This document shows, piece by piece, positions 47,633 to 51,679 of a stretch of 64,000 nt of DNA. The stretch lies in the IMG/VR virus record IMGVR_UViG_3300038424_000251, positions 186,001 to 250,000 of that record; one strand, written 5' to 3'. Made by a program: the position numbers and the translations under genes. The notes under the pieces were generated by a model that ran no database searches, had not been told where the DNA came from, and saw only the letters and a program-made list of their open reading frames with translations. Every line of letters begins with the position of its first letter. The first letter of the stretch is position 1.

Positions 47633-49081
47633 ATGAATTTTGACACAACCGGTTTATTACAGCCGCAATTTAAACATGCTGAATTTCTTGTCAATTCTCT
47701 TGAGCAAAACGGTATTGCATGGGATGGTTCCGCAACTGGCACAGGTAAAACTTATGCAGCTTGTGCTATCCTTCGTCATCTTAAATGTAAGTTCGTAGTT
47801 ATCTGTCCTAAACTTGGTATTCCTACATGGAAGTTAGTGCTTGAATCCTTTGGTCTAAAACCTGAATTCATCATTAATTATGAGAAATTAGCCCGTGGTA
47901 ACACTTCATTTTACAAAAGAATTTCTCAAAAGAAGTATAAGAAACTCTACAACATTGGCAAGGATATTGAAGTCCCTGAATTTCTTCGGGCAATGTTCAA
48001 GATTCCAAAAGACTGGCTAATTGTATTGGATGAGAGTCATAAGATGAAGGGCGTTGACTCTTTGAATGCTGGAATTCTTTTTAATATTAAGATGCAAGGA
48101 TATAAATGTCACTTAATGTCAGCGACACAAGCAACGTCTCCGCTGGACATGAGAGCATTCGGTTTTGCAATGAACCTTCACAATGGTCAAATGAAGGAAT
48201 TTAAGAAGTTTGCTGAATCTGCTGGTGCGCAGTGGATTGGTAAATGGGGACGACAATATTTTGATTCGGAAAATACAGAATCAATGGCAAAAATTCAAGC
48301 TGTTCGTGAACATCTTTATAATTTCAGAAAAGTAGGGTCGCGTCTCACTCGAAGGGACATGAAGGATATTTTTCCGCCTACACAAGTTGTGGCTGAAGCT
48401 TATGACATGGGCACCGCATCCGATAAGATTCAGGAAGTTTATGATGAAATGGAATCAGAATTAGATTTACTGGAGAAACGGTGTGAATCTTACAAAGACC
48501 ATGTTCTTGCTGCCATCATAAAGGCAAGACGAAAAGCTGAAATGTTAAAAGTTCCTACTATCGTTGAAATGGTGGCAGACTATAATACAGAAGGCCGTTC
48601 AGCAGTTATTTTTGTTAATTTTACTGATACCATTGAAGCAATCGTTTTACGCCTTGGGAAAGAATTTAATCCTGCTTTGGTCGGAAAAATTTACGGTGAA
48701 CAATCGATGAAGCAACGGCTTCAAGACATAGACGAGTTTCAAGCTGACAAAAAACATTTCATGGTGGCAAATCTTGCTGCTGGTGGCCAATGTATTAATT
48801 TGCATGATATTTTGGGCAATCGCCCGCGTTCATCGGTCATCAATCCATCATGGTCAGCAATTGCTGTTCTCCAGTCAGCCGGACGAATTGATAGAGCTTA
48901 TGCTCTTTCGGATGTTTATCAAAGATTCTTATACGCAGCGAGAACGATTGAAGAAAATGTTTGCAGACGGTTTAATGATAGAAACCGTTTTGTTACTGCT
49001 CTGAATGACGGCACCTTATCGGATGCTGATTTAATCCCTACGGAAAGATTATTCAGATTTGCCAAAGGAATGAATATCTGA
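47633..49081 (+). CDS. superfamily 2 (SNF2/SWI2-like) helicase/translocase
   Basis: SATGTGKT, INYEKL, LDESH, SAT, VIFVNF, RLQDIDEFQ, AGGQCINL, QSAGRIDR. Confidence 0.85.
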   Translation: MNFDTTGLLQPQFKHAEFLVNSLEQNGIAWDGSATGTGKTYAACAILRHLKCKFVVICPKLGIPTWKLVLESFGLKPEFIINYEKLARGNTSFYKRISQKKYKKLYNIGKDIEVPEFLRAMFKIPKDWLIVLDESHKMKGVDSLNAGILFNIKMQGYKCHLMSATQATSPLDMRAFGFAMNLHNGQMKEFKKFAESAGAQWIGKWGRQYFDSENTESMAKIQAVREHLYNFRKVGSRLTRRDMKDIFPPTQVVAEAYDMGTASDKIQEVYDEMESELDLLEKRCESYKDHVLAAIIKARRKAEMLKVPTIVEMVADYNTEGRSAVIFVNFTDTIEAIVLRLGKEFNPALVGKIYGEQSMKQRLQDIDEFQADKKHFMVANLAAGGQCINLHDILGNRPRSSVINPSWSAIAVLQSAGRIDRAYALSDVYQRFLYAARTIEENVCRRFNDRNRFVTALNDGTLSDADLIPTERLFRFAKGMNI

Positions 49082-49499: not shown

Positions 49500-49576
49500 G
49501 CAGGAGTAGCTCAACTGGATAGAGCATCTGCCTTCTAAGCAGATGGTTCCGGGTTCAAGTCCCGGCTCCTGTACCA
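49500..49576 (+). tRNA. tRNA-Arg(TCT)
   Basis: Cloverleaf: gcaggag/ctcctgt, anticodon stem tctgc-cttctaa-gcaga, T-arm ccggg-ttcaagt-cccgg, encoded CCA. Confidence 0.95.
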
Positions 49577-50022: not shown

Positions 50023-50409
50023 ATGAAAAAAGCATTCACGTTGATTGAGTTAATGATTGTTGTTGCAATCCTTGGTCTTTTGGCTGCTATTGTTGTTGGT
50101 GGTAGCGGCGGTTGTAGTGTCAGTGATGGAACAAGAACAGGCACCATTTCAAAATTCAGTAACAAAGGCATCTTTGTCAAATCGCATGAGGGTGAATTGA
50201 TTTTGGGCGGTGTTATTCAAGGTAAGTCAGCATCGGCTAACGTTTGGGAATTCAGTTGCTTAAATCAGTCATTGGTCCCTGCTCTTGAGTCTGCGGTGGA
50301 TAATGGTAACATGGTTTCTTTGAAATATCATCAAACACTTTTGTATAATCCATTCCGAAGAAACACAAGTTATTTGATTACCAGTGTCACGGTGGTAACA
50401 AACAGGTAA
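50023..50409 (+). CDS. protein with type IV prepilin-type N-terminal cleavage/methylation motif
   Basis: MKKA-FTLIELMIVVAILGLLAAIV; C-terminal SDGTRTGTISKFSNKGIFVKSHEGEL domain. Confidence 0.8.
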   Translation: MKKAFTLIELMIVVAILGLLAAIVVGGSGGCSVSDGTRTGTISKFSNKGIFVKSHEGELILGGVIQGKSASANVWEFSCLNQSLVPALESAVDNGNMVSLKYHQTLLYNPFRRNTSYLITSVTVVTNR

Positions 50410-50492: not shown

Positions 50493-50684
50493 ATGCCAGA
50501 TAATTTCATAAGAAACCGCGAAGGTAAAATCATTGGTCGCCAAGATGGCAATTGGCTTCGTGATGGTAGTGGAAAGCTTGTTGCTAGACATGATAAGGGT
50601 GATAATCGAACCAGAACGCGTGAAGGTAAAATTGTAGGTTCTGGTGACCAGAGATTGAGGGAATTAGGAAAATCAGAGGCTTGA
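50493..50684 (+). CDS. small repeat protein (R.REGKIIG / RDGSGKLVA / RTREGKIVG)
   Basis: ORF track; three internal beta-hairpin-like repeats. Confidence 0.65.
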   Translation: MPDNFIRNREGKIIGRQDGNWLRDGSGKLVARHDKGDNRTRTREGKIVGSGDQRLRELGKSEA

Positions 50685-50713
50685 CATTTTTTGGTTCTTT
50701 GATACTATTTATT

Positions 50714-51128
50714 CGTTGTCCAGTGGTAAAAGTCGCCGGTGAGCGATGTTCCCATTGGAATTAGCCAAAGCTGGGAGATGACTAGAACGTGACAGTAAAG
50801 CGTTCTTAGCTTAAATAAAAGCGCCGGGAACAAATACCGAAACACCGGAGACAGTTGAAACCCAATTGTTAGGAAAAGAGAGTAAGAAGATTACTCGTGG
50901 CCGCTAAGCGACCCGAAGGTTGAGACTACAACGTATCGGCGTAATGCTGATGGTAATGTGGAAAGAAATGAATGCTCCGAAAGGGGCCGTCTGGAGTCGG
51001 CTAAGTAAGAAACTTGGTCCATGCCGGTCTAAGTTTCTGAGGATGACCAGATGAAATTGTAGAGGCTGTATTGCCGATTGGCTGAAAGCGGCAACTTTCA
51101 TAACCAATCATCCAGCCCATGAATTTTT
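50714..51128 (+). ncRNA. candidate large structured ncRNA (~410 nt), family not recognised
   Basis: Own promoter (TTGACA 50681 / TACTAT 50703); no sense ORF; at least 10 helices; two pseudoknot-type pairings near 3' end; ends in U-tract. Confidence 0.65.
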
Positions 51129-51215
51129 TGTTGGCATATAGGTTCCTGAATAAGGACATTTAGGTTGGCTCAAACCCTTAAAGATTCCTACCTGCTACCG
51201 TGAACCACCAACAAA
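51127..51215 (+). ncRNA. candidate ~90-nt structured RNA
   Basis: Closing stem tttgttgg/ccaacaaa plus ggttc/gaacc; internal hairpins. Confidence 0.35.
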
Positions 51216-51249
51216 GCTTGATAATCTATTAAGTTGTGATAAGATAATT

Positions 51250-51329
51250 TTTTGTTGGTGAAAACAGTAAGCTGCTGCGAGGGTAATGCAAGACGATATT
51301 GTTTCCTCTAAAACTCTCCATCAATAAAA
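51250..51329 (+). ncRNA. candidate ~80-nt structured RNA
   Basis: Preceded by TTGATA-N16-TAAGAT; closing stem ttttgttggtg/catcaataaaa with GU pairs. Confidence 0.3.
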
Positions 51330-51351
51330 GACGTTCTTTGAATAATTTTGT

Positions 51352-51592
51352 GTTCCGTGACTGAGTAACTGCTACCGTTAGCAGTAAAGTAACATGAAGG
51401 TGAAGAATCTTTATGGATACGAAAGTAGCCGGAGTAAGTAAGGTAAAGGATGACTAAGTAGGCCAACTGAAAAATCCTTTGTAATCACGCTAATAAGCCA
51501 TAACGGCGTGGTTTAGGAATCGACGGGTTCCAACTGACTGAATAACTGAAAGGTAAGAATAGTCGAAGGTAACAAGCGAATCCTTCCGGAAC
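51352..51592 (+). ncRNA. candidate ~240-nt structured ncRNA immediately 5' of tRNA-Met
   Basis: Closing stem gttccg/cggaac; helices actgcta/tagcagt, aaaggat/atccttt, atcacgct/ggcgtggt, gaagg/ccttc; no ORF. Confidence 0.5.
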
Positions 51593-51602
51593 GCATTTGA
51601 AT

Positions 51603-51679
51603 AGCGGGGTGGAGCAGCTCGGTAGCTCGTCACGCTCATAACGTGAAGGTCGCTGGTTCAAATCCAGCCCCCGCAACCA
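51603..51679 (+). tRNA. tRNA-Met(CAT), initiator-like body with atypical anticodon stem
   Basis: agcgggg/ccccgca with 1:72 mismatch, tggagcagctcggtagctcg D-arm as in tRNA-fMet, anticodon stem tcacg-ctcataa-cgtga, CCA encoded. Confidence 0.9.

What the first reader, a model, noticed from the sequence alone, without database searches (positions are those of the whole stretch)
50714..51128. ~410-nt promoter-driven, densely helical RNA with a double-pseudoknot 3' domain, upstream of the tRNA cluster
Seen: dedicated promoter (50681/50703), no sense ORF, GC above the window average. Nested helices ccggtg 50736/caccgg 50843, tgttccc 50747/gggaaca 50826, agaacg/cgttct, acagttg/caattgt, gagtaa/ttactc, cgacc-cgaa-ggttg, atcggc/gctgat, gctcc-gaaa-ggggc, agaaactt/aagtttct. 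The 3' domain has atgaaa 51051/tttcat 51096 enclosing ttgccg/cggcaa. The loop gattgg (51076-81) matches ccaatc (51104-09), and the internal-loop ggctg (51064-68) matches cagcc (51113-17), giving two pseudoknots, then a U-run. Established: large ornate ncRNAs such as GOLLD and ROOL occur in phages and prophages, often near tRNA genes. Inference: a member of such a class or a new large ncRNA.
Basis: partly seen in the sequence, partly recalled or inferred. Interest (0 to 1): 0.75.

Follow-up and report, generated by a model that had tools for sequence, protein, structure and literature searches.

The report
New folded RNA gene in jumbo phage
A roughly 410-base, promoter-driven stretch with no protein-coding frame in a 365-kb peat/wetland phage genome is a real folded RNA gene of a family not described before, lying in a conserved slot just upstream of the phage's initiator-like methionine tRNA; what it does is unknown.

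Summary
Window 50714-51129 is free of ORFs, is richer in G+C than the genome (0.46 against 0.33), and lies behind a promoter of the phage's own recurring type. It folds far better than shuffled sequence (z -4.8). No Rfam 15 family matches it, including GOLLD, ROOL, RNase P, tmRNA and introns, even at E<=10. The same is true of eleven related loci.

I found one diverged homologue: a compact ~240-nt version in a sister phage (L014/15/16). There it is fused directly to an initiator-like tRNA-Met. Over 61 aligned base pairs, 17 are kept through changes on both sides and 4 are broken, so the fold is under selection.

- The 5' end is a small clamp (P1/P2), not the two long-range helices proposed.
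- gattgg/ccaatc and ggctg/cagcc are real but nested.
- atgaaa/tttcat is replaced by a covarying local hairpin.
- ttgccg/cggcaa becomes the single pseudoknot.
- About 200 nt in the middle occur only in this phage.

All relatives carry the same slot: a small beta-flower-like protein gene, a promoter, a variable structured RNA, then tRNA-Met. A second, strongly covarying RNA (51333-51599) lies next door.

Verdict: a real, new, narrowly distributed phage ncRNA. Its function is only inferred.

The parts
50678..50708 (+). Promoter: GGCTTGACA (-35 at 50681-86), 16-nt spacer, TG-extended -10 TACTAT (50703-08). The likely transcription start is about 50711-50716.
   Evidence: Consensus scan. The same extended motif occurs 17 times in the genome, and in most copies an ATG follows shortly after. 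It is conserved in front of the homologous RNAs in L004, L014, L012, L017, L052 and L054.
50720..50758 (+). 5' clamp. P1 is 50720-26 with 50752-58. It encloses hairpin P2, 50732-36 with 50743-47. The conserved strings GUGGUAA(A/G)AG and GGUGUUCCCA flank the helices.
   Evidence: Alignment A9 of the window, L004 and L014: 97% of cells paired, 3 pairs changed on both sides, and slid controls give 34-63% paired. The clamp is also in the MFE.
50767..50965 (+). Expansion specific to this lineage, about 200 nt, inserted in the linker between P1 and Ha. Hairpins: 50784-90/50800-06, 50850-57/50863-70, 50879-84/50890-95, 50909-13/50918-22 (loop CGAA), and 50934-40/50946-52 (loop GUAAU).
   Evidence: It is absent from the L014 homologue. 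No homologue was found with nhmmer --max in 445 kb of related loci. The support is thermodynamic only: z -3.07, with 0 of 200 shuffles as good.
50974..50987 (+). Ha: a hairpin with a conserved GAAA tetraloop.
   Evidence: The stem and the GAAA loop are kept in L014.
50988..51053 (+). Three-way junction. Hb is 50988-94 with 51047-53. Hc is 50997-99 with 51044-46. Hd is a long hairpin, 51008-19 with 51027-38, with a conserved UGCCG loop. The junction strings GGC(U/A)AAGUAA and UGAGGAUGA are conserved.
   Evidence: Between the window and L014, Hb has 1 compensatory pair change and Hd has 6. The loop and junction strings are identical. The independent MFEs of both RNAs give the same helices.
51064..51117 (+). 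Compact 3' domain. He is 51064-68 with 51113-17. Hf is 51076-81 with 51104-09. Hg is a local hairpin, 51083-88 with 51095-100. The pseudoknot pairs 51071-75 with the Hg loop, 51090-94.
   Evidence: He has 2 compensatory changes, Hf is invariant, Hg has 4 compensatory changes, and the pseudoknot keeps 3 of 5 pairs in L014. Model R1, built from the window alone, finds L014 over its full length at 61 bits, E 1e-11.
51124..51129 (+). A run of six U, five bases after He. It may mark the 3' end, or be a weak or leaky terminator.
   Evidence: Read from the sequence. The scan does not call it a terminator. L014 has no such run; there the RNA continues straight into tRNA-Met.
51603..51679 (+). Initiator-like tRNA-Met(CAT), with a 1-72 mismatch and a UUCAAAUCC T-loop. 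This tRNA defines the conserved slot.
   Evidence: ARAGORN and Rfam. The same tRNA follows the structured leader in every relative examined.

Best explanation
Window 50714-51129 is a real, separately promoted gene for a structured non-coding RNA. It belongs to a small family, not described before, found in a clade of peat/wetland jumbo phages.

Shown:
- A phage consensus promoter drives it.
- The RNA folds into a 5' clamp (P1/P2); a three-way junction with a conserved GAAA tetraloop and conserved junction and loop strings; and a compact 3' domain of two nested helices, a hairpin and one loop-to-strand pseudoknot.
- The window copy has an added ~200-nt set of hairpins.
- The gene sits in a slot kept throughout the clade: a small beta-flower-like protein gene, the promoter, a variable structured RNA, then an initiator-like tRNA-Met.
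- In the sister lineage the RNA abuts the tRNA with no promoter between them.

Inferred:
- The RNA is made as part of the phage's tRNA transcription unit and released as a stable molecule. In the fused form, RNase P cutting at the tRNA 5' end would release it. In the window, the U-run or downstream processing would do so.
- The knotted 3' domain shields the new 3' end from exonucleases.
- The RNA acts in trans as a scaffold or decoy connected with the phage's large translation toolkit (53 tRNAs and a tmRNA). This is the situation of other phage RNAs linked to tRNA islands, whose function is still unknown.
For: - Promoter.
- No coding frame.
- Excess folding on the sense strand: z -4.76 against -2.66.
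- The L014/15/16 homologue is found in full by a model built from the window alone: 61 bits, E 1e-11.
- Over 61 aligned pairs, 37 are identical, 17 are kept through changes on both sides, 1 through a change on one side, 4 are broken and 2 are absent. A rough binomial for 18 of 22 changed pairs staying paired gives 3e-5 at p=0.375.
- Loops and junctions are better conserved than stems: 78% identity overall against 67% at paired positions.
- The 5' clamp covaries in three lineages.
- Slot synteny.
- In L014 the only promoter near the tRNA is the one in front of the RNA, and the RNA ends at the base before the tRNA.
- The genome holds 53 tRNAs and a tmRNA.
Against: - Only two distinct sequences of the 3' domain exist, and three of the 5' clamp.
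- The pairwise alignment was fitted by hand to the structure, so the covariation count leans towards it.
- There is no statistical covariation test on a deep alignment.
- No RNA-seq run holding the sequence was listed, so neither the transcript nor its ends have been seen.
- The central 200 nt has no comparative support.
- The function is pure inference. No partner, target or phenotype is known.
- The U-run is not a canonical terminator, so the 3' end in this phage is uncertain.
Confidence: 0.75

Rival explanations
1. It is not an independent RNA but a cis-acting 5' leader of the downstream RNA2/tRNA-Met transcript. In this reading it stabilises, times or attenuates production of the initiator-like tRNA, for example through a regulated weak terminator at the U-run.
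For: It always lies upstream of the same tRNA. It is fused to that tRNA in L014. The U-run follows a structured domain.
Against: In the window, a second promoter of the phage type (51215-45) and a further 470 nt separate it from the tRNA. The RNA bodies in the slot differ entirely between close relatives while the tRNA stays the same, which is odd for a dedicated regulator. The U-run is absent from the homologue.
Confidence: 0.2
2. RNA1 is only the variable 5' half of a larger two-part RNA of about 890 nt (50714-51602). The conserved 3' half is RNA2 (51333-51599). The layout would resemble GOLLD, which has a variable 5' region, a conserved 3' region and linked tRNAs.
For: In L004 an RNA with the same promoter and 5' clamp is followed 25 nt after its U-run by RNA2, with no promoter between them. 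RNA2 is 80-90% identical across phages whose helicases are about 50% identical, and 26 of its 66 predicted pairs covary. [quoted passage not shown]
Against: The window has a good phage promoter between the two parts. The L014 lineage has RNA1 without RNA2, and several lineages have neither. No long-range pairing between the two parts was found. No GOLLD match was found.
Confidence: 0.12
3. It is a highly diverged member of a known family: GOLLD, ROOL, RNase P RNA, tmRNA, or a group I or II intron.
For: It lies beside tRNAs in a phage, as GOLLD and ROOL do. There is a superficial likeness to the RNase P strings AGAUGAAUG and CCGGCUUA. That comparison is from my own memory and is only a lead.
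Against: No such model scores at E<=10 on 3 kb, on 921 nt, or on the compact homologue. Nothing but tRNAs reaches gathering score in 117 kb of related loci. ARAGORN finds no tmRNA here and a proper tmRNA elsewhere in the genome. No P4-type pairing with a bulged U could be drawn. There is no exon context.
Confidence: 0.03
4. There is no function: a chance-folding spacer, a decayed gene remnant, or a small protein gene on either strand.
For: The family is very narrow, with two lineages. Short ORFs exist: 44 aa on the + strand and 67 aa on the - strand. The region is hypervariable between relatives.
Against: The substitutions are compensatory and the indels are not in threes. tblastx and tblastn show no protein-level likeness to the genes that fill the slot in relatives. 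The sequence is identical in four further peat metagenomes, and the L014 form is identical in three independent samples. The promoter is conserved.
Confidence: 0.04

Closest known systems
GOLLD and ROOL (large ornate RNAs of phages and prophages)
   Same: Encoded by a phage, next to tRNA genes (GOLLD env-38 lies beside a Met-tRNA). Several hundred nucleotides long, with many hairpins, GNRA loops and a pseudoknot. Part of the RNA is variable and part conserved. Function unknown (PMC12286853).
   Different: No sequence or structure match to either Rfam model at any threshold tried. It is shorter (about 240-415 nt) and has a different helix plan. It is known from two phage lineages only. Whether it forms oligomers was not tested.
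Phage T4 'species 1' and 'species 2' stable RNAs in the tRNA gene cluster (from my own knowledge, not checked here)
   Same: Small stable RNAs of unknown function encoded among phage tRNA genes and matured from the same precursor as the tRNAs. This is the arrangement inferred here, and it is explicit in the fused L014 form.
   Different: The T4 RNAs are about 140 nt and unrelated in sequence. Here the RNA has its own strong promoter, is larger and is modular.
RNAs whose 3' end is made by RNase P cutting a downstream tRNA or tRNA-like element, such as MALAT1-mascRNA (from my own knowledge)
   Same: In L014 the structured RNA ends at the base before a tRNA, and a compact knotted domain lies 9 nt from that end. 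This fits a 3' end made by RNase P and shielded by structure.
   Different: That is a eukaryotic system with a triple-helix element. Here processing has not been observed, and in the window copy the tRNA is 470 nt away.
Bacterial RNase P RNA
   Same: Similar size, a link to tRNAs, GNRA hairpins, and short strings reminiscent of conserved regions IV and V.
   Different: No covariance-model match. No P4 pseudoknot with a bulged U and no conserved region I could be placed. I treated this as a lead and dropped it.

Membership tests
GOLLD RNA (Rfam) | Match to the family covariance model, which covers the conserved 3' domain | tested here: not met
   No hit at gathering score. No hit at E<=10 on 3 kb or on 921 nt. 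None in related loci.
GOLLD RNA (Rfam) | Phage or prophage location beside tRNA genes, with a variable 5' part and a conserved 3' part | tested here: met
   A jumbo-phage tRNA slot. The middle is variable and the 3' domain conserved. This context is shared with other RNAs and does not define the family.
ROOL RNA (Rfam) | Match to the family covariance model | tested here: not met
   No hit.
GOLLD/ROOL kind (RNA-only cages) | Homo-oligomeric assembly | not testable with these tools
   Needs SEC-MALS or cryo-EM of the transcript.
Bacterial RNase P RNA | Covariance-model match; P4 pseudoknot with a bulged U; conserved regions I-V | tested here: not met
   No RNase P model at E<=10. By inspection, no P4-type pairing is kept in both the window and L014.
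tmRNA | tRNA-like domain plus a tag reading frame | tested here: not met
   ARAGORN finds none in the window. It finds a normal tmRNA at genome 260388-260791. No Rfam match.
Group I / group II introns | Catalytic-core model match and an interrupted host gene | tested here: not met
   No model match. The flanking genes and the tRNA-Met are intact.
Stable RNAs of phage tRNA operons (T4 species 1/2 type) | Encoded within a phage tRNA cluster on the same strand | tested here: met
   It lies between tRNA-Arg at 49500 and tRNA-Met at 51603, all on the + strand. The synteny holds across the clade.
Stable RNAs of phage tRNA operons (T4 species 1/2 type) | Co-transcribed with tRNAs and released by precursor processing | not testable with these tools
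   No RNA run was listed. The fused L014 arrangement, with a single promoter, implies it.
sRNA ended by an intrinsic terminator | G+C-rich hairpin followed directly by a U-run | tested here: not met
   The scan calls no terminator at 51100-51130. The U-run starts 5 nt after helix He and is absent in L014.

The most novel reading that the evidence does not exclude
The slot in front of the phage's initiator-like tRNA-Met is a fast-evolving cassette site. These jumbo phages keep swapping unrelated, individually well-folded RNA modules there: RNA1, RNA2 and at least three or four others. Each module is driven by the same promoter and released by tRNA processing. The modules would be trans-acting effectors, for example decoys for host RNA-targeting defences or for parts of the translation machinery, or self-assembling RNA-only particles like GOLLD and ROOL. 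RNA1 would be one such effector.
Probability: 0.2. Interest if true: 0.85.

Novelty: new variant of a known kind. Interest (0 to 1): 0.6.

Why it matters
Large, elaborately folded RNAs beside phage tRNA islands (GOLLD, ROOL) are among the least understood RNAs in biology.

This locus adds a new family with its own architecture. It also shows that a clade of huge phages keeps one fixed genomic slot, in front of an initiator-like tRNA, and fills it with different structured RNAs in different lineages.

This natural module swapping, together with one lineage where the RNA is fused to the tRNA, gives a concrete and testable model for how such RNAs are made. It also suggests they are accessory, fast-evolving effectors rather than housekeeping RNAs.

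The neighbouring RNA2, which covaries strongly, is a ready candidate for structural work.

Tried and rejected
Searches and ideas that led nowhere:
- Rfam at gathering score and at E<=10 on the window, on a 921-nt slice, on the compact homologue and on 11 related loci gave only tRNAs and chance snoRNA or lncRNA hits.
- blastn against 50,697 GenBank phages gave only tRNA-Met hits.
- BLAST and model R1 against ten whole related virus records and against the phage's own genome found no further copy.
- Pattern scans of IMG/VR gave only the phage itself or chance hits inside coding regions. Three used RNA1 motifs; a fourth used an RNA2 motif.
- The single metagenome scan returned the same phage, the L014-type contig, and 18 chance hits.
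- The genome-collection scan gave two hits inside genes, plus one intergenic look-alike of the 5' motif in a Deltaproteobacteria MAG (L059), which I could not tell from chance.
- Twelve contig look-ups for close helicase relatives turned up many different leader RNAs, but only one lineage with RNA1.
- Microdiversity: four further peat runs carry no substitution in RNA1.
- Expression: no RNA run was listed.
- Decayed-gene idea: tblastx and tblastn against the HNH genes that fill the slot in relatives found nothing.
- RNase P, tmRNA and hammerhead likenesses seen by eye failed against the homologue and the models, and were dropped.
- The MAFFT global alignment of the window against L014 was wrong. 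I replaced it with a local alignment and a model-guided one.

Full report
**Where the window lies**

The window is bases 186001-250000 of a 365,299-bp virus record. The record has 33% G+C and carries 53 tRNA genes and a tmRNA. It is therefore a jumbo phage. Near-identical DNA is present in many peat and wetland metagenomes.

**Checking the observation**

- Between the stop of a 63-aa ORF (50684) and tRNA-Met (51603) there is no credible ORF on either strand.
- The proposed promoter is TTGACA, 16 nt, then TG-extended TACTAT. In its longer form, GGCTTGAC-N17-19-TAnnAT, it occurs 17 times in the genome, and in most copies an ATG follows shortly after. It is the phage's standard promoter.
- G+C rises to 0.46-0.47 over the element.
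- The sense strand folds to -132.9 kcal/mol, with z -4.76 and none of 100 shuffles as good. The antisense strand gives z -2.66.

**Known families**

Rfam 15 gives only the four tRNAs at gathering score. At E<=10 nothing relevant appears on 3 kb or on a 921-nt slice searched with laxer filters. ARAGORN finds no tmRNA in the window, and the phage has a normal tmRNA elsewhere. blastn against GenBank phages finds only tRNA-Met.

**Finding relatives**

The helicase 1.6 kb upstream (47633-49081) has hundreds of metagenomic homologues. I fetched their loci from IMG/VR and from assemblies.

All share the order helicase, tRNA-Arg(TCT), a variable stretch, tRNA-Met(CAT), tRNA-Glu, then a GP88-family gene.

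A plain nhmmer search with RNA1 found nothing. tblastx, however, showed nucleotide-level likeness of the promoter and the first 60 nt to L004. A profile of that segment then found the same promoter and 5' motif in L014/15/16, L012, L017/18, L052 and L054.

Read in full, L014 carries a compact ~240-nt version of RNA1. Its helicase is 75% identical, and the RNA sequence is the same in three independent samples. It has the same 5' clamp, GAAA hairpin, junction strings, UGCCG-loop hairpin, GAGGAUGA, and the CCGAUUGG...AACCAAUCAUCC pair. It lacks window 50767-50965, and it runs straight into tRNA-Met with no promoter between.

A covariance model of the 3' 157 nt, built from the window sequence alone, finds L014 over its full length at 61 bits, E 1e-11. 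It finds nothing else in 350 kb of loci, in the phage's own genome, or in ten related virus records. Pattern scans of IMG/VR, JGI metagenomes and GTDB genomes added no further members.

**Structure from the comparison**

Aligning the helices of the two RNAs gives 61 pairs: 37 identical, 17 kept through changes on both sides, 1 kept through a change on one side, 4 broken and 2 absent. Of the 22 pairs that changed, 18 stay paired. A rough binomial gives 3e-5 for this. The alignment was fitted by hand, so that figure is generous.

Several points support the structure independently:
- The separate MFEs of the two RNAs give the same helices.
- Stems are less conserved than loops (67% against 78% identity).
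- The 5' clamp, checked in three lineages on a MAFFT alignment, is 97% paired against 34-63% when the partners are slid.

The resulting model has four parts:
- The P1/P2 clamp.
- A linker, which holds the 200-nt expansion in the window.
- A GAAA hairpin (Ha) and a three-way junction (Hb, Hc, Hd).
- A 3' domain in which ggctg/cagcc (He) encloses gattgg/ccaatc (Hf). Hf encloses a local hairpin (Hg), and the Hg loop GGCAA pairs back to UUGCC just 5' of Hf.

L004, like the window, does have a GGGAAC downstream of the conserved GUUCCC, so an alternative conformer is not excluded.

The central expansion rests on thermodynamics alone (z -3.07; no homologue).

**The slot**

A 58-63-aa protein with three GK-x-x-G repeats sits immediately before the promoter in most relatives. 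Its nearest Atlas neighbours point to the beta-flower fold, which is only a lead.

Between that promoter and the initiator-like tRNA-Met, every relative has 240-900 nt free of ORFs. The content differs from lineage to lineage:
- RNA1-type in the window and L014.
- A different body in L004 and L050.
- Another in L052 and L017.
- Others in L051/L012, L049 and L063.

None matches Rfam.

In the window, L004, L012 and L055, a second RNA lies just before the tRNA (RNA2, window 51333-51599). It is 80-90% identical between phages whose helicases are about 50% identical, and 26 of its 66 predicted pairs covary. In the window it has its own promoter of the phage type (51215-45). In L004 it follows the RNA1-like unit directly.

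**How it probably works**

Shown: a conserved promoter, a selected fold, a fixed position in front of one tRNA, and fusion to that tRNA in one lineage.

Inferred: the RNA is transcribed with, or next to, the tRNA unit and released as a stable species. RNase P would release it in the fused form; the U-run or later processing would do so here. The compact knotted 3' domain would protect the end, and the RNA would act in trans.

The conserved GAAA loop and the invariant junction strings suggest tertiary contacts or a partner.

The turnover of modules between close relatives suggests an accessory, fast-evolving role rather than a housekeeping one. The report's other fields give the rivals: a cis leader, one half of a two-part RNA with RNA2, a diverged known family, or no function.

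**Limits**

- There are two distinct sequences for most of the fold.
- No expression data exist.
- There is no microdiversity.
- No functional evidence exists.

**Verdict**

This is a real structured RNA gene. It is not GOLLD or ROOL. It is a new narrow family of the known kind 'ornate phage RNAs beside tRNAs', with a corrected structure and a notable genomic context.

Noticed in passing
window 51333-51599 (+); homologues L004 12526-12792, L012 13913-14209, L055 4039-4350: A second structured RNA ('RNA2', about 270 nt) lies directly upstream of tRNA-Met. It is closed by GUUCCG/CGGAAC around about eight hairpins. It is 80-90% identical across phages whose helicases are about 50% identical, and 26 of 66 predicted pairs covary. 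It has no Rfam match. In IMG/VR it is found only in this phage clade.
   Followed up: partly
window 51215-51245 (+): A second promoter of the phage type (GCTTGATA, 16 nt, TG-extended TAAGAT) lies between RNA1 and RNA2. Equivalent promoters sit just before tRNA-Met in L012, L017, L051 and L052, so promoter-plus-RNA units appear to be shuffled as cassettes.
   Followed up: partly
window 50493-50684 (+): A 63-aa protein with three GK-x-x-G repeats has a stop codon that overlaps the RNA1 promoter. Homologues sit in the same place before the RNA promoter in L005-7, L012, L014, L049, L051 and L063. It has no Pfam or PHROG hit. Atlas neighbours suggest a beta-flower fold.
   Followed up: partly
window 51603-51679 (+): The tRNA-Met has initiator-like features: a 1-72 mismatch, a GCGGGG acceptor stem and a UUCAAAUCC T-loop. 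It lacks the three G-C pairs in the anticodon stem. Several relatives carry a second, ordinary tRNA-Met(CAT) next to tRNA-Arg.
   Followed up: no
window 50023-50409 (+): A 128-aa protein has a prepilin-type N-terminal methylation motif (Pfam N_methyl). This pilin-like 'moron' lies in the variable stretch between tRNA-Arg and RNA1. No homologue was found in the related loci.
   Followed up: no
genome outside the window: G000 260388-260791 and 266814-295096: The phage carries a tmRNA and a long island of about 43 tRNAs. One of them has a CTA anticodon (an amber-reading tRNA, which ARAGORN calls 'tRNA-Pyl'). L017 has a tRNA with a TTA anticodon. This may point to stop-codon reassignment in this clade.
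   Followed up: no
genome outside the window: G000 267372-267800 (+): Another consensus promoter is followed by several hundred bases with no long ORF, GNRA-type hairpins, and a string GGCGUAAGUAAAC that recalls RNA1's GGCUAAGUAAGAAAC. It may be a further structured RNA. Model R1 does not hit it.
   Followed up: no
L059 2029-2101 (-), Deltaproteobacteria MAG: An intergenic copy of the 5' motif: GUGGUAAAAG, a perfect hairpin, then GGUGUUCCCAC. It has no phage promoter and no tRNA nearby. I could not tell it from a chance hit; about four were expected for the pattern.
   Followed up: partly
L004 11758-12190 (-), L012 12560-13222 (-), also L020 and L051: HNH-type endonuclease genes occupy the same variable tRNA-Arg to tRNA-Met stretch in relatives. 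This fits a recombination or homing hotspot. The long N-terminal extension of the L004 ORF overlaps the RNA on the other strand and is probably not real.
   Followed up: no
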